Origin: Rhodosorus marinus CCMP1338
Lineage: Eukaryota > Plantae > Rhodophyta
Assembly (NCBI GenBank): GCA_029953675.1
Contig: JAMWBK010000003.1
Span: 1,240,001 to 1,304,000, forward strand
Direction of reading: 5' to 3'
Length of the DNA stretch: 64,000 nt
A program made the translations under genes and the position numbers. Of this stretch, positions 25,501 through 36,357 are shown piece by piece (position 1 is the first letter of the stretch; every line of letters starts with the position of its first letter). The notes below the pieces were generated by a model. The model was not told the origin of the DNA, searched no databases, and worked only from the letters and a program-made list of their open reading frames with translations.

Positions 25501-26757
25501 AGTATTTCTCTTCAATTAGTTCTTCACACCAACATGTACTCTCCCTGTGTGAGAGCGTAGCACTTTCCCACGTCGAATAGTTGGCAAACTATAGGAATCA
25601 CGGTCTCCCGTTTAACCGTTTCTTCAAGTGGGCTTGTTTCATGTGTTAAACGTGCCATCTCGCGAGCGAGGTTTCGGCACACAAAATCGTTCGTTCCTCC
25701 TCTGGCCTCCACCAGAAGCAGAAGCCACTTCAGCCAAAACCGGTAGCACTGGATGCTGACCTACGGTAGACCGGAAGGTCAGATTCGCTCGATGGCGCAC
25801 CTGCAGCGGAGTACTGCACTGCACATCTCAACGAACAGGACACTAGCAACCCTGGGAGACAACGCTCATTTCCTCTTTGCTCTGATTGATAGCAACCAAG
25901 GTAGCCAGATTGCTGGTCGTGTACAGTTCTACGTCAGGCTACAAATACCACTACCACCAAAGAATTTCTCTACCAAAGCGATGCCTAACAACTGAAGACG
26001 CAGCCCCGCTTGCCTCTCACCGCGAACAGTAGTTTTCCCATGCACCCGCTCCAAAACCCGCAATCTCCGCTACGCCCGACCGTTCCAAAACAAATATTCG
26101 GACAGCCTGTTGAGCATTACTTTCAAAACCCTAATTTGACGTCCACTTCTCACATTTCGAGGATTTTTGACCCCCACAAACATTAGAATTGCAATAAAAC
26201 GATTTTCCATCGAGTGGCAGTTCTCAGCACAGTCTCGGTTGGCTCGCACGTTGCCAAAACGTCGCTCTTCACTCTAACGACTGGTGCCGACCTGCAAGCT
26301 GTGCCCCATGTATATTCTCGTGTTACATTAGAAGGATACTCACGAGGGCGCCTTTTGCCGAGTGGAAGACGATTCATAAACTCGTGGCTCGCTCATTACT
26401 AGAGGGATTCCTCCTCCGCAGTGTGGCAACGTTGCTCACGCTGCGTAAGATCTTACTTAGAAAAAGTGGGTCCGCAATGCCCAGGTAGACGTGGTAGACC
26501 TCAAGCCGATTGAGACCCGAGAACAAGCGCTAGAACCGAGATTGGCTTGCTCACCTCTTCTAACCCCGTCAACCTCCCACGGTATGGACGAGGCGGATGA
26601 TAGTGATCATTGAAAGGAAGCGCTGGGAAGACAAAAAACTTTTGCGATTGGAATAGGAACGAACCTCTCGAGGCTGTTTTTCGTCTGGGACAAGCTCGAG
26701 ATACATAGGCTTTTATCTAAATTGCAGTTGACCAGAAACACGGTAGAGGGAGGATCG

Positions 26758-28590
26758 ATGACTGCCTTTGTGCCAGTGTTGCAAGTGATCAGTAGAAATA
26801 GGCACTTGGGAGCGGAGCAACTCAGGGAGAATTTGAACTACGCAGAGGGTGTGAGCAATAGGAGGAGGGGGCAAGTTCAGTGTGCGAGCGAAAATTCTTG
26901 GCTGCAGAGGAGAAGAAAGAGGAGGAGTTTAGAGAAAAGATCTGAAACTAAGGTTGCCGTTTGTGGAGGAGGCAGTTTTGGTACTGCGATTGCCTTCCTG
27001 TTGGCGAATAACGGATACCCTGTTCAGATACTCGTAAGCACATGGATCCGCGTCTGTCTTGTGCAATTCGTATGGACTTCTTCGCACGGTCCCGTTTTCT
27101 ATGCTTAATCGTTCGCGCTTGTCTTGTGACACGTTAATAGGTCAGAAAGACTTGGGTTCGAGATGAGATCAACGTCGAAAGGCGCAATCCAAAGTACTTC
27201 ACAGAATTTGTCTTGCCCGATAATGTCACGGTAATTTCTCCCGCCACAGCGGGTCATGACAAATGACAGGTTTGCACAATACGGAGTTGTGCTAATTGCC
27301 GGTTTGGACTTTTCTGTTTCAGGCAACAATTGATGCCGAGGAAGCCCTGACCGATGCAAAGCTGATAGTCCACGCTGTCCCTGTTCAGCAGTCGCGCAGT
27401 TTCTTCGAAGCCAATACCGAGTACTTCCCAGCTGATGCTCCCGTTCTATGCACGTCGAAAGGACTTGAAGTTACCTCCCTCAAGTTCATGTGTGAGCTTC
27501 TGCCAGAGCTGGTAAGAGATCGTTCACCAGAAGTGGCGGACTCGACATTGATTATGCTCAGCTTTCGCTTCTTTTGCCGGAACTACTCTTGCAATAGCTC
27601 CCACGAACCAAATCATTTGCGTATCTGTCCGGGCCGAGCTTTGCCAGGGAGATGATGGATCAGCTACCCACTGCTGTGGTCGTCGCGTCAGATGATGTCG
27701 ATCTAGCCCTTCGAATCGCGGATATGATGTCGTCCCCATTTTTCAAGGTAGGGATTCGTGGCCAAAGATTATGACAGCGCCTAGGTGCAGCACGAGCACA
27801 CCTGGTCGGACGAGCAAGCCGCTGATCCCTTCGAAACGAATTTTGAAGGTTTTTACATCAAGTGATACGATCGGTGTTGAAGTCGCTGGTGCGGTGAAGA
27901 ATGTCATCGCCATCGCCGCGGGAATTTGCGAGGGGCTAGGGTTGGGTACCAACTCTATGGCCGCTTTGGTGACGAGGGGCTGCTCTGAGGTGGGCGCTGC
28001 CGTTCATTTCAGTGTCTCACGGTGAAATCCACTCGAATTGAGAGACGAGCGCTGAGAAAGTGGTATTTGTCCTATCCAATCCCTCTTGGCTGCTTTTTGG
28101 AATCTAGATGCGCCGTCTCGCTCTCAACATGGGAGCTTCGCCGATAACCTTAAGCGGCTTGTCTGGCGTGGGAGATACGTTTCTCACTTGCTTTGGCCCC
28201 CTTTCTAGAAATCGAAACGTTGGTGTCAGACTCGGAAAAGGCGAAACGTTGGACAGTATACTTTCGTCGTCGAGACAGGTGAGGCCCACAGTAGATGATT
28301 GCTTTCTCAGTCATTGGGACTTTGTTTAAGCGATTTGCCGACTCCCCACCGGGTGCGTTTTTGCTAAGGTTGCTGAGGGCGTCACGACTGCCGAAGCTCT
28401 GGTAGGAATGTTACTGAATCAGTACAACGGAGTCTCACAGCAAGACAACAAGGAGATTAACGTCTACGCAACGCGCGCAGCTGCTCGATATCCGATTCTC
28501 TTTGGCGTGAGGGCTATTCTGGAAGGACGAATTACTCCTCAGGAGGGAGTTGAAGCACTTCTCGCAATGCCCCCAAGAGAGGAAAACTAA
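26758..28590 (+). CDS. GPDH: NAD(P)+-dependent glycerol-3-phosphate dehydrogenase (GpsA type), probably plastid-targeted; 7 exons (26758-27033, 27141-27230, 27323-27511, 27598-27747, 27849-27989, 28108-28278, 28369-28590)
   Basis: Motifs [40 protein letters not shown]...SRNR and VAEGVTT. All exons join in phase 0. N-terminal MTAFV extension of about 60 aa. Confidence 0.93.
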
Positions 28591-29273
28591 CGTAATTATC
28601 AAGAGCAATCCCCCTCATACGGGGGTTAATAAAGTGTTTGGATCTCTTCCAGCTTAATCCGCCGCATTTGAAGGAAGTAAGGAATGCGCGGAGCAACCGT
28701 CCAGTTAGAAAACAGTTCACAGCCCACGGATAGCACTTGCGGTTCACCAAAGAACTGTGCGAACGCTTACCGAGATGTTTCGAGGAGGTATTGACCAGCT
28801 CAAAACATTGAATGCCTTGCTCTTGAGGACTGCCTCGCTGAAACGTGCAGAAAGAGAAACAGGAATATCAGTACCATGCGCTGGGGTAGTCAGGGTAAGT
28901 GGGTTTTGGCTGAATCAATGCAACTCTTCCGAGTTCATCAAGATATCATCGCAGCGGGTAATGAGAGAAGCTCGCACGGGGAACTGGTACTAGAAGAGAG
29001 GCCTTTCAGAAAGTTCTTGAGTGTCGTGTGCTCGCTGTAGGGGAATACTGTGGGACGCGAGATCCGCCTTTTTACAAAAAGTAACCTTTACTTTTCTATC
29101 CTTCCCTCGTAGGCGGCTAGTAACAGCTAGTATAAAGCATGAAATTTCCATGCAAACAAACGTAGCCTAGATTTATAAAACATGCGGTCATCTCACACCG
29201 ACCAAAAAAATTTAACGCTCTCCGCGTTCTGCGTTTCCGCTTTCAAATAACATCGAACAAGGACGCAGTGAAG

Positions 29274-30590
29274 TTAGGATATTACGCAGCATCCTCTCTT
29301 CTCCTTCACAGCTGTTTCTGGTGCGGCCGCCGGCGCAGCATCCGTCTCCGTAGGATAGTTTTTCGGGTCCGGTTTTCCTTCAACGCGGAAAAGAAGAAAG
29401 CGGGTGTCCTACAAGTCAGCTAACCTAGCGCCTAGGTCTTCCTAGTTCAAGAGAGGAAGGCAAAGCGATCGCGGCATACCTTTGACGCTTCGAAAGTTGA
29501 CCTCATTCCCACCCTCCCCGGTGAGGGGATGGACTTTGCTGACTCTCCACACCCCGTCGACGATGAACTTGAATTCGTGGTCACCAATCGGTACAGGTGT
29601 TACGACAGACCAGAATCCACTGACTGCAACACGGGAAACGTGACAGCGGATTAAAAAAAAATTATCGGAATGGACTGATCAGAAATTTCAACGGCTTCGA
29701 TATTGCGTGATATGCACGACAGAAACGTCCTGCAACTAAATTGGAAGTCCATGAGCCGTACCGCCTTCGCAGTACATCTGTATAGGCAGAAAGTTGTTCC
29801 AATCTCCGCACAGCTTCACGTCACGAGCTGCTCCCTCCGGCCAGACAAACTCTGTCTGCACGAGAAGTATGTCCTCGGTGTTGTCATCCCCTATTGCGGT
29901 CATTGGATCCATTTCCGCTGAATCAACTTCGGACAGAAAGCGATGGAAACAGGAAGGTCAGCGCAAACATACAACTAAGCTAGGCTGGAAGTACGCACCT
30001 CCAGCAGCTGTAGCAGCCTTTCCCTCCGCGATGATATCCGCCATCCCTTCGTCTTTCTCCTCAACGGCTTCTATCGAATGGAACGCATTTTTCTGTTAGA
30101 AATCAAGCAACCAGTCGCGTGAACTCCAACTGTTTTCGTTCGGACCAGTCCTACCGCTGAGATCGGCTGGGGGGGGCAAATCCTCAACAACCGGCTGTGG
30201 GGCAACTTTTCCTTCAGCAACATCATGGACCTCGGCCATCGTTCCTTCCTCCTCTGTCACAGCCTCCAAATACGCCTCAGGAGCAACATCGGAAGTTTCT
30301 ACAGGATTTTTTTCTATGTTATCCACCGCTGAAGGCTCAACCACGGCGGGAACCACCTCATCCGCCACTTCCACAGTGTCAGCCACCACTTCCTCCATTG
30401 GCCCATCGTTCACCTGTTTCAGAGCCTCTATACCAGCGGAAGATTCTTGCGCGACAGCAGCGTCGACGTCCACTGGTTCAAAGGCCTCTACGACTGGAGG
30501 TTCTTCCACAGGCGCAACCACTTCCTCTTCCATCACCTCCGTAGTATGCACTACTTCCACGACGGGGGCAGCCTCCACTTCCGCCTCCAT
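29274..30590 (-). CDS. Acidic V/E/A-rich protein with a CBM48 (AMPK-beta-like glucan-binding) domain and C-terminal CaaX; exons 30590-30155, 30070-29999, 29917-29762, 29623-29480, 29377-29274
   Basis: TEFVWPEGAARDVKLCGDWNNF...FWSVVTPVPIGDHEFKFIVDGVW. All junctions are phase-1 GT-AG and sum to 912 nt. Ends KEKRGCCVIS*. The start may lie in an upstream exon. Confidence 0.8.
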
Positions 30591-31492
30591 GTAAACCTCC
30601 TTTACCGACGCACCAAACAAATGAACCAGAACCGTTCCTTTCAGTCAGCAAGATACCCCAGAAAGAAATTGCTTCTCCGAGCTCAATCTACTTCCTGTCA
30701 AACTTCAGAAACGTTTACAATCACGAAACTGTTCTTGCCCGCCCCCCGCCCCCAAAAAAACAAAGGTTCAAGACCCCTTCTAAACAGTATGCTTCGAATT
30801 GCCCCGATCAAAGGACTTCCGCAGACACTCTCGTCAGCTGCTCCCTAGTAGCTCCTTCATAATCCCCTTTTCCCACTCCTCGAAACCCCACAAACTCCGC
30901 AACAGAGCCCAACACCAACAAAAGATACAAAACGACAACCCCTTATTGAAATACCTCAGCAAAAGATAATTTATCTTTCAAAAGAAAAATAGACCGAACG
31001 CAGATTAAACCTTCCCGCAGGAAACCCCCCATACCATATTGAAATCAATGAACGCAATCAGATTTGGGTGTTTTTTAAAAAATCGTCGTTCTGAAATAGG
31101 ACAGTCTGTTAGAAAAAAAAGATAATTTTAAATAAATAGAATTCCAATTGACATGACAGACTGCCACTTTCGAGAATCGAGTTTCATGCTTTTTTGGCGG
31201 TCGAAGGATATCAAACACCCCGAAATCATCGACTAGACCAACACCAACAAGTCAAGGGCGATGCGCTTTATGTCACTGGCGGTCATGGCCGTGATGAGCG
31301 TGAAAGTCTGTTAGCAAACGAGCAAGAGCGACGCGTACACGGTATTGGAATTGCTCGGGGAGCCAAGATCGCAGTTGCGGTAAGTTCAATTTATTCTCTT
31401 CCAATTCTCGATCGCGGAAAAGGGATCGTCATTCAATAGAAGGTGGAAAATTCTTGGTTTCGCTTGGCTTCAGCATTCTAAGCACATTTCTG

Positions 31493-32236
31493 TTACAAGG
31501 GAGTGGGCATGGAGTCGGGCAAAGGCGTATTTGGATCTTCCTGTACTTTTTCGAGCACAAATGAAAGCTCCGAGAGCTTTGATCTCAATGACCTCCTGCC
31601 CCAGTGCGTATCTTCCTCACAAAGCTTCCCCTCCAGTTTGGACATTCGTTCCCGAATGGCTCTTATTTTCCGGTATGGCCATCGAGATATACCCGCCCGC
31701 CGGCAACGGCGTTTCAATAGTGTGACCGAGATTCGGAGTCTTCTCGCGGCTTCGGCTCTAGGCAGATGAAAGTAATCCCTGAGGTAGCCGTACTTGGGAA
31801 CCGACCAACCGGCACCCGCTTTCACTTCCCGATGATCGCAGTCCACTTGATGCATGGTATTGGCAGCCTGCGGCTGCGTTGTAAACCCAGTCGAGCCCGT
31901 CGACCTCATCTGGTCGTTCGAGAAATCATCCACACTAAGGGATTCGAGCGTCGACCCACCGTTCGGGATTTGGTTGAACAGAACTTCCCAGAAGGATTCA
32001 GTTTTCTGAATGACGGGGTCGCGATCATCGAGCAAGCAGCCTGATGACAACGAAAACTCCTCGGCGATTGATGTATCTGACGTCTGATCAGAATCGACGA
32101 GTTGATTGTTCAAGTCTGTTTCGATAATGCCATATGCCTCTTGGAAGGACCCGTCTCGTTCACAGAGGAAACCGAATACATCTGCGTCCTTGCACGCCGC
32201 TTCAGCGGGAGGGAAACTGTAATCAAGGAAGCTCAT
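31493..32236 (-). CDS. RWP-RK domain transcription factor (RKD-like, single exon)
   Basis: YFHLPRAEAARRLRISVTLLKRRCRRAGISRWPYRKI with an acidic N-terminal region. Confidence 0.9.
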   Translation of the reverse strand: MSFLDYSFPPAEAACKDADVFGFLCERDGSFQEAYGIIETDLNNQLVDSDQTSDTSIAEEFSLSSGCLLDDRDPVIQKTESFWEVLFNQIPNGGSTLESLSVDDFSNDQMRSTGSTGFTTQPQAANTMHQVDCDHREVKAGAGWSVPKYGYLRDYFHLPRAEAARRLRISVTLLKRRCRRAGISRWPYRKIRAIRERMSKLEGKLCEEDTHWGRRSLRSKLSELSFVLEKVQEDPNTPLPDSMPTPL

Positions 32237-33594: not shown

Positions 33595-36357
33595 CTACCA
33601 AAGGCATGCGTGGGCTGCTGCTAGTCTGGCAGCGGGAATCCTGTAAGGGGAACATGAAACATAGTCTAGACCCATCTTGTGACAAAGAACAATGCTGGAT
33701 GGATCTCCTCCGTGCTCGCCACATATTCCGATCTGAAGTGCTGGGTTAGCTTCTCGCCCGTCGTTTGTCGCCATATGTACAAGCTTTCCAACCCCTTTCT
33801 CGTCCAGTGACTGGAAAGGATTCTTCATAAGGATATTCTTATTCACATAGTCCTGGAGAAATCTGCGCTCAGCATCGTCTCGGCTCATCCCGAAGGACAT
33901 CTGAGTAAGGTCGTTTGTACCAAACGAGAAGAAGTCTGCGCTCCGCGCAATTTCATCCGCAGTTACTGCTGCTCGTGGAGTTTCAATCATGGTTCCAATC
34001 TTGTACGAGAGATCCTTCATGTTGTTCAGTTCGAGTACCTCATCTGCATACAACTCACACTGGTGTCGGACCATCTCCAACTCCTTGCTAACGGAGATAA
34101 GCGGTATCATGATCTCGGGCAGCACGCTCATTCCCTCTCTCCGCACGTTGCAGGCTGCTCCAATGATGGCCTTGACTTGCATCTTAATAAGCTCAGGGTA
34201 GAGAATGCTTACGCGAACGCCACGAAGACCCATCATGGGATTTGACTCATGCAGGCTCTCAACTTGCGCCAGGAGCTCCCGCGTTTCCTCAAGTTGCCGG
34301 CGAAGTCCATTGCTGGATACTTCCATCTTGGCCACACTACTTACGAGCGCATCTCTATCTGGCAGGAACTCGTGCAGAGGTGGATCCAAAAGTCGAATGA
34401 TCACGGGAAAACCGCTCATCGCCCGATAGATAGCTTCAAAGTCCGCAGTCTGAATTGGAAGGAGATCATCCAACGCAGCCGCTCTCTGCTTGGTGTCCTG
34501 CGATAGAATGAACTTGCGCATAAGAGGTAGTCGTTCGCTACCGAAAAACATGTGTTCCGTTCTGCACAAGCCAATCCCAACTGCTCCAAACGCTCTAGCC
34601 TTGGCAGAGTCCACACCGCTGTCACCGTTACTGAAAACTTTTAGGCCGCGCATCTTCTTGTTGTTGCGAGTGTAGTTCTCCGCAGCAATCTCGTCGCTCC
34701 AATCCAGTATCATCTGTAAGTCCTCCTCATGCTCAAAGTTGGCATCGACAGTCGATATCGGCCCTTGGAACACCTCCCCAACGGACGCATTAAGTGAAAT
34801 CACGTCACCCTCGTGTACAACAGTGCCTTGAGCAGTTGTAAAGCATCTCTTCTCCGTGTCAATGACGATGGTGGACGCAGAGCAAATACAAGGAATTCCA
34901 AACTGCCTCGCCACTACCGCGGCATGTGATGTAGCGCCACCCTCTGCCGTGAGTACGCCCTTCGAAGCGAAGAATCCAGGCACATCGTCAGGTTTCGTAA
35001 ACTGGCGTACCAAGATCACGTCCTTTCCCTGACTGTGAAGTTCCTCCGCCGTCTTTGAATCGAGTGCAACTTGTCCCACTGCCCCGCCAGGGCTTGCATT
35101 CACTCCGCTCGCAAGCATAAGCGATTTCCTTCTTGCCTCTTCCATTTCCCTCTCGTCGAGTTGGGGCATAAGCAAGACATCCACATCTCCAGTCTGGACA
35201 CGCTTGACAGCCTCCTCTTTGCTGATCAATCCCTCCCGTACCATGTCCTTCGCAATTCTGACTTGGGCTCGAGCAGTTCTTTTGCCATCACGAGTCTGCA
35301 ACATGAAAAGTTTGCCCTCCTGGACAGTGAACTCTATATCCTGCATGTTTCTGAAGACCTGCTCGAGATTATTACCCACGCGGAGCAATTCCTCGTAAGC
35401 CTGCGCAAACCGGCCTTTAAGCTCATGTACGTTGAAGCACGAGCGAATTCCAGCGACAACATCCTCGCCCTGAGCATTGGGAAGAAAATCTCCAAACATT
35501 CTGTTCTCCCCCGTAGTAGGGTTCCGAGTGAAGGCAACGCCCGTGCAGCTTGTGTCGCCCATGTTGCCAAAGACCATGGATTGAATGTTACATGCAGTGC
35601 CGAGCTCGTGCGGAATGCCCGTTGCGTTCCTATACGCGCGTGCCCTCTCGCTGTTCCAAGAGGAGAACACTGCTGTGATGGCCATCTTCATCTGTACCAA
35701 AGGGTTCTGCGGCAGATCTGATCCAGTTTGCTCTTTCAGAATTGTCCGATAAATTGAAACGATCGCCTTCCAATCATCCACTGTCATGTCGAGGTCTGAC
35801 TCGTACCCAGCCTTTGCCTTGTAGGTCTTTAGTTGTTCTTCGAACAGGTCATCGGCCACACCCATGACAATTGCCCCAAAGCCCTGGATAAGCCTCCTAT
35901 AGGAATCGTACGCGAATCTAGGATTCGTCGCCTTTGCCAGAGACACAACGTTCGCATCGGTTAATCCGGTATTCAGTAGAGTATCCATCATTCCTGGCAT
36001 TGAAAACTTTGCTCCTGATCGACAGGACACCAGCAGAGGATCGACGTCTGCTCCGAACTTCTTCCCCATCCTAGTCTCCACCTTCCGCAGAGCATCCAGG
36101 ACACTGGTCCATACCTGTTCGGAGATGGAGTCCTGCTTCAAATAATCAAGGCATGCCTCTGTCGTAACGGTAAAACCGTAAGGGACCGGCAGGCCCTCAG
36201 AAGCCATTTTCCCCAGGTTTGCTCCTTTTCCTCCGAGCAATTCGCGCACGGCATCCCAGGAACCTCCAACGTTTCTTTCGGCACGCGCTACGTCATCGAA
36301 GAGGTAGACGTACCGATCATTGTTCAAACTTTTCTCATCCATTTCTGCTGATCGCAT
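33595..36357 (-). CDS. PPDK: Pyruvate, phosphate dikinase (intronless, no obvious transit peptide)
   Basis: LGGKGANL, SGAKFSMPGMMDT, GEDVVAGIR, DIEFT, GGATSHAAVVAR (regulatory Thr and catalytic His), GIGLCRTEHMF, FSFGTNDLTQ and CGEHGG. 920 aa. Confidence 0.98.
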   Translation of the reverse strand: MRSAEMDEKSLNNDRYVYLFDDVARAERNVGGSWDAVRELLGGKGANLGKMASEGLPVPYGFTVTTEACLDYLKQDSISEQVWTSVLDALRKVETRMGKKFGADVDPLLVSCRSGAKFSMPGMMDTLLNTGLTDANVVSLAKATNPRFAYDSYRRLIQGFGAIVMGVADDLFEEQLKTYKAKAGYESDLDMTVDDWKAIVSIYRTILKEQTGSDLPQNPLVQMKMAITAVFSSWNSERARAYRNATGIPHELGTACNIQSMVFGNMGDTSCTGVAFTRNPTTGENRMFGDFLPNAQGEDVVAGIRSCFNVHELKGRFAQAYEELLRVGNNLEQVFRNMQDIEFTVQEGKLFMLQTRDGKRTARAQVRIAKDMVREGLISKEEAVKRVQTGDVDVLLMPQLDEREMEEARRKSLMLASGVNASPGGAVGQVALDSKTAEELHSQGKDVILVRQFTKPDDVPGFFASKGVLTAEGGATSHAAVVARQFGIPCICSASTIVIDTEKRCFTTAQGTVVHEGDVISLNASVGEVFQGPISTVDANFEHEEDLQMILDWSDEIAAENYTRNNKKMRGLKVFSNGDSGVDSAKARAFGAVGIGLCRTEHMFFGSERLPLMRKFILSQDTKQRAAALDDLLPIQTADFEAIYRAMSGFPVIIRLLDPPLHEFLPDRDALVSSVAKMEVSSNGLRRQLEETRELLAQVESLHESNPMMGLRGVRVSILYPELIKMQVKAIIGAACNVRREGMSVLPEIMIPLISVSKELEMVRHQCELYADEVLELNNMKDLSYKIGTMIETPRAAVTADEIARSADFFSFGTNDLTQMSFGMSRDDAERRFLQDYVNKNILMKNPFQSLDEKGVGKLVHMATNDGREANPALQIGICGEHGGDPSSIVLCHKMGLDYVSCSPYRIPAARLAAAHACLW

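What the first reader, a model, noticed from the sequence alone, without database searches (positions are those of the whole stretch)
29274..30590. Candidate prenylated glucan-binding tether: acidic linker + CBM48 + CaaX box
Seen: five exons splice in frame to about 303 aa. The protein has a long V/E/A/P-rich, disordered-looking region, one CBM48 and the C-terminus KEKRGCCVIS*. No kinase, phosphatase or AMPK-beta ASC domain is evident. Established: CBM48 binds glycogen/starch; CVIS fits the CaaX prenylation consensus; an adjacent Cys and a basic patch are typical second membrane signals; red-algal floridean starch is cytosolic. Inference: this could anchor storage-glucan granules, or their initiation, to a membrane. 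I do not recognise this architecture. An upstream AG (~29409) would instead give the non-lipidated end GHPLSSFPR*, so alternative splicing could switch anchoring on or off.
Basis: partly seen in the sequence, partly recalled or inferred. Interest (0 to 1): 0.75.

Follow-up and report, generated by a model that had tools for sequence, protein, structure and literature searches.

The report
Lipid-anchored starch-binding protein of red algae
This is a real, transcribed gene of the red alga Rhodosorus marinus. Its protein joins a starch/glycogen-binding module to a conserved C-terminal lipid-anchor signal, and it belongs to an undescribed family found across red algae that probably holds cytosolic storage glucan against a membrane.

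Summary
On the minus strand, five exons (30590-30155, 30070-29999, 29926-29762, 29623-29480, 29377-29274) give a 306-aa protein identical to Rhodosorus marinus NDN08_003141. It has an acidic disordered N-terminus, one CBM48 (residues 190-272) and the end KEKRGCCVIS.

A cDNA from another strain is spliced at all four junctions, including 29480|29377. No transcript uses the 29409 acceptor, which lies 7 nt after the only branch-point motif. Intron-retained isoforms exist for three of the four introns.

The refutation test "orthologs lack the CaaX" fails. Four Rhodosorus versions read CVIS, CIIS, CVVS and CMIS. Of 50 closest single-CBM relatives, 21 end in CaaX (17 as CC-a-a-X) and 17 end in a C-terminal transmembrane-like segment. 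Named members are all red algae (Bangiopsis, Pyropia, Galdieria, Porphyridium and others).

The conserved core is CBM48, a tether of about 33 residues, and a basic CCaaX. The acidic region is a lineage-specific N-terminal add-on, not the linker.

Prenylation, glucan binding and the target membrane are all inferred, not shown. I found no paper on the family. The closest precedents are yeast Atg45, Stbd1, PTST2-MFP1 and myristoylated AMPK-beta. Verdict: a new variant of a known kind.

The parts
29274..30590 (-). Whole coding span of the gene (R. marinus NDN08_003141), 306 codons plus stop in five exons
   Evidence: Splice model and translation. 100% identity and coverage to KAJ8906651.1. cDNA L002 of another strain aligns exon by exon.
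30155..30590 (-). Exon 1: start codon and most of the acidic, disordered N-terminal extension
   Evidence: Composition and net charge -48. pLDDT about 50. dN/dS 0.50 against strain L002.
29999..30070 (-). Exon 2: end of the acidic region
29762..29926 (-). Exon 3: end of the disordered region and first half of the CBM48
29480..29623 (-). Exon 4: second half of the CBM48
   Evidence: 92% nucleotide identity to the other strain.
29481..29867 (-). CBM48 / AMPK1_CBM module, residues 190-272, interrupted by intron 3
   Evidence: Pfam PF16561 E 4.9e-12. AMPK-beta1 CBM is the best PDB sequence match. AF2 pLDDT >90, and Foldseek gives TM 0.89, rmsd 1.9 A to AMPK-beta2 CBM 4yee. dN/dS 0.06. F215/K243/W250 align with beta1 W100/K126/W133, and invariant N267 lies next to the N150 column.
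29378..29479 (-). Intron 4 (102 nt). It holds the CTGAC branch motif at 29419-29415, the unused AG at 29410-29409 and the used AG at 29379-29378. It is retained in some transcripts.
   Evidence: Branch-motif distances. Exact junction in cDNA L002. Retained in L003, L004, P0002, P0003 and P0018, with tails in different frames in different strains.
29292..29377 (-). Exon 5, first part: flexible Pro/Ala-rich tether (residues 273-301) ending in the basic patch KEKRG
   Evidence: Tether length is conserved in the family, median 33 residues.
29277..29291 (-). CCVIS: Cys302 (candidate S-acylation site) and the CaaX box Cys303-Val-Ile-Ser306. The stop codon is at 29274-29276.
   Evidence: Variants CIIS, CVVS and CMIS in other strains or alleles. 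CC-a-a-X in 17 of 50 relatives.
29040..29273 (-). 3' UTR (at least this far)
   Evidence: cDNA L002 aligns down to 29040.
30591..30711 (-). 5' UTR (approximate). No upstream coding exon.
   Evidence: cDNA contigs of other strains align from 30687 (L002) and 30711 (L003). There is an in-frame stop 7 codons upstream of the ATG in L002.

Best explanation
The locus encodes a cytosolic, non-catalytic adaptor protein. Its CBM48 module binds alpha-1,4/1,6-glucan, meaning floridean starch or its soluble precursors, which in red algae are cytosolic. Its C-terminus, KEKRG-C-CVIS, is a Ras2-type 'CCaaX' signal. By inference, Cys303 is farnesylated (X = Ser), -VIS is removed, the new end is methylated, and Cys302 is then S-acylated, with the basic patch helping membrane binding. 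That would hold the CBM48 on a tether of about 30 residues, at most roughly 10 nm from the cytosolic face of a membrane, so that glucan is captured, positioned or nucleated there. The 188-residue acidic N-terminal region is a lineage-specific extension of unknown role. The gene is one of two Rhodosorus paralogues of a family found across red algae, whose conserved core is CBM48 + tether of about 33 residues + basic CCaaX.

Shown: the gene model, its expression and splicing, the CBM48 fold, conservation of the CaaX, and the family's distribution. Inferred: lipidation, glucan binding, which membrane, and the physiological role.
For: Gene model and identity. All four splice junctions, including 29480|29377, are confirmed in cDNA L002.

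CBM48: Pfam 46.3 bits, AMPK-beta and SEX4 CBMs in the PDB, AF2 pLDDT >90 with TM 0.89 to AMPK-beta2 CBM. The equivalents of the aromatic platform and Lys are kept: F215, K243, W250. In 31 family members those columns read W 28/31, K 27/31 and W 30/31. dN/dS is 0.06.

CaaX under selection: CVIS, CIIS, CVVS and CMIS occur in four Rhodosorus versions, all with invariant KEK[RK]GCC. The last 10 residues have dN/dS about 0.1, against 0.55 for the whole tail (small counts).

Family: in a search of 1.84 billion representatives, 21 of 50 closest single-CBM proteins end in CaaX, 17 of them as CC-a-a-X, and 17 more end in a hydrophobic transmembrane-like C-terminus. Two independent kinds of C-terminal membrane anchor on related modules point to the membrane as the functional point. 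Named CaaX members are R. marinus (two paralogues), Bangiopsis, Pyropia yezoensis, P. vietnamensis and Galdieria phlegrea.

Geometry: tether length is conserved (median 33 residues), the 12 residues before the Cys are usually basic, and the N-terminal extension varies from 3 to 356 residues.

Topology: there is no transit- or signal-like N-terminus (it starts MEAEVEA and is acidic), which fits a cytosolic protein. Floridean starch being cytosolic is established knowledge, also stated in PMC2955755.
Against: There is no direct evidence of prenylation, acylation, membrane association or glucan binding.

In this paralogue the residue equivalent to AMPK-beta1 W100 is Phe, although it is Trp in 28 of 31 relatives. 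The loop around beta1 L146-N150 aligns ambiguously.

I could not check the presence of farnesyltransferase, RCE1, ICMT or DHHC enzymes in Rhodosorus with these tools.

Orthologues in Florideophyceae and Porphyridiophyceae (Agarophyton, Porphyridium aerugineum, Timspurckia) have no CaaX and end in RKKKGGGFFSKK-like tails. A lipid anchor is therefore not indispensable to the family, though that tail could itself bind membranes.

Transcripts that retain the last intron and would encode an anchor-less protein occur in at least three strains.

CBM48 modules can also serve protein contacts or regulation, as in AMPK-beta.
Confidence: 0.5

Rival explanations
1. The protein is a receptor for glucan turnover (glycophagy or starch delivery to a lytic compartment) rather than for granule positioning or initiation. 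It would work like yeast Atg45 (CBM48 + AIM + C-terminal membrane-binding helix) or mammalian Stbd1 (membrane anchor + AIM + CBM20), coating a membrane that engulfs glucan.
For: Atg45 has the same order of parts and tethers glycogen to isolation membranes (PMC11145338). An AIM-like FEPV flanked by acidic residues at 37-40 is conserved in three Rhodosorus strains within an otherwise fast-evolving region.
Against: The AIM-like motif is absent from most family members, many of which have almost no N-terminal extension, and none has one in the tether. Pro inside an AIM core is unusual (own knowledge). A constitutive lipid anchor is not how known autophagy receptors work.
Confidence: 0.15
2. The protein is a membrane-anchored regulatory or scaffold protein. 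In this reading the CBM48 senses soluble sugars or oligosaccharides, or binds partner proteins such as a kinase or glucan-metabolising enzymes, rather than tethering granules. This matches the proposal for the cytosolic CBM48 of red-algal cellulose synthase, and the protein-contact roles of the AMPK-beta CBM.
For: Red-algal CESA carries a cytosolic CBM48 on a plasma-membrane enzyme, with a proposed role in sensing carbohydrate status (PMC2955755). W100 is replaced by Phe in this paralogue. Farnesyl plus palmitoyl ends of the Ras2 type usually target the plasma membrane (own knowledge). Yeast Crp1, a CBM48 protein, sits with Gsy2 at the cell periphery.
Against: The glucan-contact aromatic and Lys positions are conserved across the family. 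No further domain or conserved motif that could signal is present.
Confidence: 0.2
3. Anchoring is switched by RNA processing. In the reader's form, acceptor 29409 gives ...GHPLSSFPR*. In the modified form, regulated retention of intron 4 gives a soluble ...VKGMPRSLCLPLLN* protein.
For: Intron-4-retaining transcripts with introns 1-3 removed are assembled in at least three strains (P0002/P0011, P0003, P0018). The stop then lies in the last exon, so such mRNAs should escape nonsense-mediated decay (inference).
Against: No transcript has the 29409 junction. That AG is 7 nt from the only CTRAY motif, and introns 1 and 3 likewise skip AGs 3-4 nt after their branch motifs. Retention isoforms are also assembled for introns 2 and 3, so this looks like general incomplete splicing. 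The retained-intron tails differ in frame and sequence between strains, so they are not conserved as protein.
Confidence: 0.1
4. The CaaX-like ending is not modified, and the protein is a soluble CBM48 protein.
For: No biochemical data exist. Some orthologues lack the motif.
Against: Cys-Cys and the last residue are conserved while the middle residues vary only among aliphatic residues, and 21 of 50 relatives carry the motif where well under 1% would be expected by chance (own estimate). A parallel clade has transmembrane-like C-termini.
Confidence: 0.07

Closest known systems
Yeast Atg45 (Yil024c), glycophagy receptor; paralogous CBM48-only proteins Crp1 and Mdg1 (PMC11145338)
   Same: Small non-catalytic protein with one PF16561 CBM48, a short linker and a C-terminal element that binds membranes. 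It brings glycogen to a membrane surface. Crp1 co-localises with glycogen synthase at the cell periphery.
   Different: Atg45 binds membranes through an amphipathic helix plus an Atg8-interacting motif, not a lipid anchor. It is restricted to Saccharomycetaceae. No detectable orthology was seen: it is not among the listed best 150 of 700 hits. The red-algal core has no conserved AIM.
AMPK / SNF1 / SnRK1 beta subunits
   Same: The CBM48 is of the same Pfam family and fold, and these are the best PDB matches. The beta subunits are lipidated (N-myristoylated) and membrane-associated (own knowledge).
   Different: No ASC/AMPKBI domain is present, so the protein cannot bridge the alpha and gamma subunits. 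There is no Gly2. The lipid signal is at the opposite end and of a different type.
Plant PTST1/2/3 and the PTST2-MFP1 system (PMC10801857)
   Same: Non-catalytic CBM48 adaptors for starch. Through membrane-associated MFP1, the site of granule initiation is fixed at a membrane.
   Different: PTSTs are plastidial and have coiled coils, and the membrane link is through a partner protein. Here no helices are predicted, the protein is cytosolic and the anchor is intrinsic.
Mammalian Stbd1 (PMC5358331, PMC7648618)
   Same: Membrane anchor + disordered region + glucan-binding module. It tethers glycogen to ER membranes and is lipid-modified (N-myristoyl).
   Different: It has a CBM20, not a CBM48, and an N-terminal transmembrane anchor. 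The order of parts is the mirror image.
Red-algal cellulose synthase with N-terminal CBM48 (Griffithsia, Pyropia; PMC2955755)
   Same: A CBM48 held at the cytosolic face of a membrane in red algae, where starch is cytosolic.
   Different: There the module is part of a large polytopic enzyme. Its glucan-binding residues are partly substituted.
Ras2-type CCaaX ends (farnesyl + palmitoyl); farnesylated phosphorylase kinase alpha/beta (both from own knowledge, not checked here)
   Same: A Cys directly before a CaaX box ending in Ser, preceded by basic residues. Phosphorylase kinase is a prenylated protein of glycogen metabolism.
   Different: Those are GTPases or a kinase. None carries a CBM48.

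Membership tests
CBM48 / Pfam AMPK1_CBM (PF16561) | Profile match above the curated threshold | tested here: met
   46.3 bits against a cut-off of 26.8, residues 192-272.
CBM48 / Pfam AMPK1_CBM (PF16561) | Beta-sandwich fold of the AMPK-beta CBM | tested here: met
   AF2 pLDDT >90 over 190-270. Foldseek 4yee_A TM (target) 0.89, rmsd 1.9 A.
CBM48 / Pfam AMPK1_CBM (PF16561) | Glucan-contact residues (rat beta1 W100, K126, W133, N150; list from own knowledge) | tested here: inconclusive
   F215 (Trp in 28/31 relatives), K243 and W250 are kept. Invariant N267 aligns one column from N150 in an ambiguous loop.
CBM48 / Pfam AMPK1_CBM (PF16561) | Actual binding of alpha-glucan | not testable with these tools
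   Needs a pull-down or ITC with recombinant module.
AMPK/SnRK1 beta subunit | C-terminal ASC/AMPKBI domain (PF04739) that binds the alpha and gamma subunits | tested here: not met
   No hit at E <= 1. Only 34 residues follow the CBM.
AMPK/SnRK1 beta subunit | N-terminal Gly2 myristoylation site | tested here: not met
   The N-terminus is MEAEVEA.
CaaX prenylation substrates | Cys at -4, hydrophobic a2, and X that fits FTase (S, M, Q, A, C) | tested here: met
   C-V-I-S*.
CaaX prenylation substrates | Motif conserved in orthologues while a1/a2 drift among allowed residues | tested here: met
   CVIS, CIIS, CVVS and CMIS in Rhodosorus. CTIS, CSIS, CVIS and CLIS in other species. 21 of 50 relatives carry it.
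CaaX prenylation substrates | Cytosolic exposure of the C-terminus, and presence of FTase, RCE1 and ICMT in the organism | not tested
   No targeting peptide is evident. The enzymes could not be searched in the Rhodosorus genome with these tools, and the literature searches gave nothing specific.
CaaX prenylation substrates | Covalent isoprenoid on the Cys | not testable with these tools
   Needs metabolic labelling, mass spectrometry or an in-vitro FTase assay.
PTST (Protein Targeting To Starch) | Coiled-coil region plus plastid targeting | tested here: not met
   No helices of 4 or more residues are predicted outside the CBM. The acidic N-terminus is not a transit peptide (sequence).
Stbd1 | CBM20 and an N-terminal hydrophobic anchor | tested here: not met
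   No CBM20 hit. The N-terminus is acidic.
Atg45-like glycophagy receptor | Atg8-interacting motif between the CBM48 and the C-terminal membrane-binding element | tested here: not met
   No [WFY]xx[LIV] in the tether of any of the 11 members examined. Only an N-terminal FEPV specific to Rhodosorus.

The most novel reading that the evidence does not exclude
Red algae, the lineage that makes starch in the cytosol, may use a dedicated, phylum-wide set of C-terminally membrane-anchored CBM48 proteins. One clade ends in CCaaX or in a basic-aromatic tail, and a second clade ends in a tail-anchor helix. These proteins would decide where on which membrane floridean starch granules are started or parked. 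That would be a cytosolic counterpart of the plastidial MFP1-PTST2 system, evolved independently and with an intrinsic lipid anchor.
Probability: 0.3. Interest if true: 0.8.

Novelty: new variant of a known kind. Interest (0 to 1): 0.62.

Why it matters
How starch granules are initiated and positioned is understood only for plastids of green plants. For the cytosolic floridean starch of red algae, I know of no positioning or initiation factor, and the searches here found none. This family gives a concrete, small and easily mutated candidate: one Cys-to-Ser change should release it from the membrane. It also offers a natural comparative series (CaaX, basic-aromatic tail, transmembrane tail) for testing whether membrane attachment of a glucan-binding module matters. 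It would also add a new class of substrate to the short list of known prenylated proteins in algae. For red seaweeds grown as crops (Pyropia/Neopyropia) it concerns carbon storage.

Tried and rejected
- **AMPK/SnRK1 beta subunit:** rejected, because there is no ASC domain and no Gly2.
- **PTST-like or Stbd1-like membership:** rejected on domain content.
the translation is verified, but no transcript has it and it is too close to the branch motif.
- **Encoding-contig look-ups for P0002 and P0003:** found nothing. The cDNA evidence came from cluster members P0015, P0011 and P0017 instead.
- **Second word-index homologue search with the CBM + tail:** only 12 candidates. The exhaustive representative search was the one that revealed the family.
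- **Large multi-CBM hits in that search:** they are amylase, GH57, caspase or unassigned proteins, not cellulose synthases, and tell nothing about this gene.
- **Placing unnamed Logan contigs taxonomically from their neighbours:** failed, so I cannot say whether the CaaX clade extends beyond red algae.
- **Literature searches:** CBM48 with prenylation, farnesyl or floridean starch found no description of the family. Searches for farnesyltransferase in red algae found nothing usable.
- **Genomic neighbours:** glycerol-3-phosphate dehydrogenase, an RWP-RK protein and PPDK give no functional hint.
Full report
**1. What is in the sequence**

The gene lies on the minus strand. Its five exons are 30590-30155, 30070-29999, 29926-29762, 29623-29480 and 29377-29274. 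All introns are GT..AG, and the exons join in frame to 921 nt, giving 306 aa ending KEKRGCCVIS*.

The protein is identical over its full length to KAJ8906651.1, 'hypothetical protein NDN08_003141' of the red alga Rhodosorus marinus. The published chromosome-level assembly is of strain CCMP1338 and was annotated with BRAKER1 trained on RNA-seq (PMC10250338).

**2. Is the model, and in particular the CaaX exon, real?**

It is. Transcriptome assemblies of other R. marinus strains (MMETSP0011, MMETSP0315 and their JGI re-assemblies) contain the orthologue in many isoforms.

- The cDNA contig L002 aligns to the window in five blocks whose ends coincide with the four predicted junctions. At nucleotide level it reads ...GTCAAAG|GAAAAC..., which is 29480 joined to 29377.
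- The fully spliced ORFs end KEKKGCCIIS (P0009) and KEKRGCCVVS (P0015).
- A largely unspliced contig from the same sample as L002 (L004) carries a fourth version, KEKRGCCMIS.
- None of about 20 transcript-derived ORFs ends GHPLSSFPR or an equivalent, so there is no evidence for the 29409 acceptor.
- The only CTRAY branch-point motif of intron 4 (CTGAC, 29419-29415) lies 38 nt before the used acceptor, with a pyrimidine run between them. The 29409 AG is only 7 nt after the branch adenosine.
- Introns 1 and 3 of the same gene likewise skip AGs that lie 3-4 nt after their branch motifs. That AGs so close to a branch point are not used is established splicing knowledge.

Isoforms that retain intron 4 do exist and would give anchor-less proteins. 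In the window the end would be ...VKGMPRSLCLPLLN*. However:

- Isoforms retaining intron 2 or intron 3 also exist.
- The retained-intron tails differ in frame and sequence between strains: GIPRSLPSVSFPGLGRPRRYFS, GMPRSLSLLALD and GIAPFGFLSWTRKT. They therefore evolve as non-coding DNA.

Whether retention of the last intron is regulated cannot be decided without read counts.

**3. The parts**

- **Acidic N-terminus.** Residues 1-188 are E/V/A/D/P-rich with net charge -48. AlphaFold2 predicts them as disordered. They evolve fast (dN/dS 0.50 between strains) and carry a repeat expansion in one strain (P0009).
- **CBM48.** Residues 190-272 are an AMPK-beta-type CBM48.
  - Pfam PF16561 gives E 4.9e-12.
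  - The AMPK-beta1/2 CBMs and the SEX4 CBM are the best PDB sequence matches.
  - pLDDT is above 90, and Foldseek gives TM 0.89 and rmsd 1.9 A to the AMPK-beta2 CBM.
  - dN/dS is 0.06.
  - The positions that stack on and contact glucan in rat beta1 (W100, K126, W133; list from my own knowledge) are F215, K243 and W250 here. In a 31-member family alignment those columns read W 28/31, K 27/31 and W 30/31.
  - An invariant Asn (N267) lies next to the N150 column, in a loop whose alignment is ambiguous.
- **No other domain.** No kinase, phosphatase or ASC/AMPKBI domain is present.
- **Tail.** Residues 273-301 are a Pro/Ala-rich tail ending in KEKRG. Then come Cys302 and the CaaX box C303-V-I-S306.

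**4. The family, which is the main new result**

An exhaustive HMMER search of 1.84 billion representative proteins with residues 167-306 gave 700 hits at E <= 1e-3. I looked at the C-termini of the 50 best proteins with a single CBM48.

| C-terminal type | Count among 50 |
|---|---|
| CaaX box, preceded by a second Cys (CCTIS, CCSIS, CCVIS, CCIIS, CCVVS, CCLIS, CCVIM and others) | 17 |
| CaaX box without the second Cys | 4 |
| Hydrophobic, transmembrane-like C-terminus | 17 |
| Other: fragments, intron-retention products, or a basic tail ending GGFFSKK/GLFxK | 12 |

By my own rough estimate, well under 1% of proteins would end in CaaX by chance.

Every member that carries a source name is a red alga.

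- **CaaX type:** R. marinus (the window gene plus a second paralogue, P0184, 227 aa, CCSIS), Bangiopsis sp., Pyropia yezoensis, Pyropia vietnamensis and Galdieria phlegrea.
- **Basic-aromatic tail:** Agarophyton chilense, Porphyridium aerugineum and Timspurckia.
- **Transmembrane type:** Galdieria sulphuraria Gasu_29330, Porphyridium purpureum FVE85_4990 and Erythrolobus madagascarensis.

A rough neighbour-joining tree of the CBM region gives three findings:

- The window gene and one unnamed relative (P0021, CCTIS) form a divergent branch beside the 'canonical' CaaX clade.
- The basic-tail proteins fall inside that larger group.
- The transmembrane proteins form a separate clade.

Across 34 CaaX members, the distance from the end of the CBM to the Cys is fairly constant: median 33 residues, 13-44 in 33 of the 34 (the motif anchor failed for P0033). 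The 12 residues before the Cys are usually basic. The N-terminal extension varies from 3 to 356 residues and is acidic in some members and proline-rich in others.

The conserved unit is therefore CBM48 + tether + basic CCaaX. The acidic region of the Rhodosorus protein is an add-on at the far end, not the linker.

**5. Most likely mechanism**

The ending fits a farnesyltransferase substrate: X = Ser and a2 = Ile (specificity rules from established knowledge). The Cys directly before the box, together with nearby basic residues, is the arrangement of yeast Ras2-type ends, which are farnesylated and then palmitoylated (own knowledge). The protein has no targeting peptide, so it should meet both the cytosolic prenylation machinery and the cytosolic starch of red algae.

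I therefore read it as a lipid-anchored glucan-binding adaptor. It would hold its CBM48 within roughly 10 nm of a membrane (about 30 disordered residues) and thereby capture, position or seed floridean starch there.

- **Shown:** gene model, expression, fold, selection on the CaaX, and family distribution.
- **Inferred:** the lipid modifications, glucan binding, the identity of the membrane, and the physiological role.

I give about 0.7 that it is lipidated and membrane-bound, about 0.6 that the module binds alpha-glucan, and about 0.5 for the combined adaptor reading. The specific claim of granule initiation or positioning rates lower, about 0.3.

**6. Rivals**

- **(a) Turnover receptor in the manner of yeast Atg45.**
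  - Atg45 has a CBM48, an Atg8-interacting motif and a C-terminal amphipathic helix that binds membranes, and it brings glycogen to isolation membranes (PMC11145338).
  - The order of parts is strikingly similar.
  - Against it, the red-algal core has no conserved AIM. Only Rhodosorus has an AIM-like FEPV, at residues 37-40.
- **(b) Membrane-bound sensor or scaffold.** In this reading the CBM48 binds small sugars or proteins, as proposed for the cytosolic CBM48 of red-algal cellulose synthase (PMC2955755).
- **(c) RNA-processing switch.** The 29409 version is unsupported, and the intron-retention version remains open.
- **(d) Unmodified, soluble protein.** This is unlikely given the conservation pattern.

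**7. Comparison with what is known**

The protein is a member of CBM48/PF16561.

It is not:

- an AMPK-beta subunit (no ASC domain, no Gly2);
- a PTST (no coiled coil, not plastidial);
- Stbd1 (no CBM20).

The same logic, a glucan-binding module tied to a membrane, is known in:

- Atg45;
- Stbd1 (PMC5358331);
- PTST2 acting through MFP1 (PMC10801857);
- myristoylated AMPK-beta (own knowledge).

I found no paper that mentions a CBM48 together with prenylation or farnesylation, or that describes this family in red algae. That library does not hold most subscription-journal papers. The gene itself is annotated only as hypothetical.

I rate it a new variant of a known kind: a new anchor type, a new lineage-wide family, and a cytosolic starch system where no such factor is known.

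**8. Limits**

- The taxonomic reach of the unnamed members is unknown, and the attempts to place them failed.
- The prenylation enzymes of Rhodosorus were not checked.
- The tree is a quick distance tree.
- dN/dS values for the 10-residue end rest on three substitutions.
- The AMPK-beta1 residue list, the Ras2 comparison and the phosphorylase-kinase comparison come from memory.

Noticed in passing
P0078 (Galdieria sulphuraria Gasu_29330), P0159 (Porphyridium purpureum FVE85_4990), P0137 (Erythrolobus) and about 14 unnamed relatives: This is a second red-algal clade of small CBM48 proteins, ending in a C-terminal transmembrane-like segment instead of CaaX. In these proteins the equivalents of AMPK-beta1 K126 and W133 are replaced (REFCYLVDG..., no Trp), so they may not bind glucan.
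   Followed up: partly
P0199 (Agarophyton chilense), P0006 (Porphyridium aerugineum), P0196 (Timspurckia), P0197-P0211: Orthologues in Florideophyceae and Porphyridiophyceae replace the CaaX by a Ser/Arg-rich stretch (RRDSRASSASVDS) followed by RKKKGGGFFSKK. This could be a non-lipid, possibly phosphorylation-controlled membrane-binding tail.
   Followed up: no
L002 versus L004 (both from JGI sample 3300016967): The same strain sample holds two versions of the gene. They are 99-100% identical in exons 3-4 but only 89% identical in exon 5 plus the 3' UTR, and they end CVVS versus CMIS. They could be alleles, recent copies or chimeric assembly.
   Followed up: partly
window 29378-30154 (introns 2-4) and transcripts P0002-P0019: Isoforms retaining intron 2, 3 or 4, singly and in combination, are assembled in at least three strains. 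Retention of intron 1 was not seen. Incomplete splicing seems common for this gene.
   Followed up: partly
window 30470-30485 (residues 36-41, AFEPVD): An Atg8-interacting-motif-like FEPV flanked by acidic residues is conserved in three Rhodosorus strains inside an otherwise fast-evolving region. It is absent from other family members.
   Followed up: partly
P0009 (MMETSP0011 strain), region corresponding to window ~30330-30380: There is a repeat expansion (VGADPVE / VVADPVE units) in the acidic region of one strain relative to the window sequence.
   Followed up: no
window 26722-28800 (+), 31493-32236 (-), 33595-36357 (-): The neighbours are a convergent NAD-dependent glycerol-3-phosphate dehydrogenase, an RWP-RK domain protein (Pfam E 5.7e-20) and a pyruvate phosphate dikinase (920-aa single ORF). 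I saw no functional link to the CBM48 gene.
   Followed up: partly
P0166 versus P0022 (Bangiopsis sp. CCMP1999): The EukProt model of the Bangiopsis orthologue diverges just before the CaaX (QRKKKDAAQFHDQ..., 352 aa), whereas the MMETSP ORF ends QRKKRGCCTIS. This is probably a frameshifted or unspliced transcript.
   Followed up: no
P0023 (Logan contig L007, 2591-3250): This relative has two tandem CBM48 modules and the ending KPKCCALC. Its organism is unknown.
   Followed up: no
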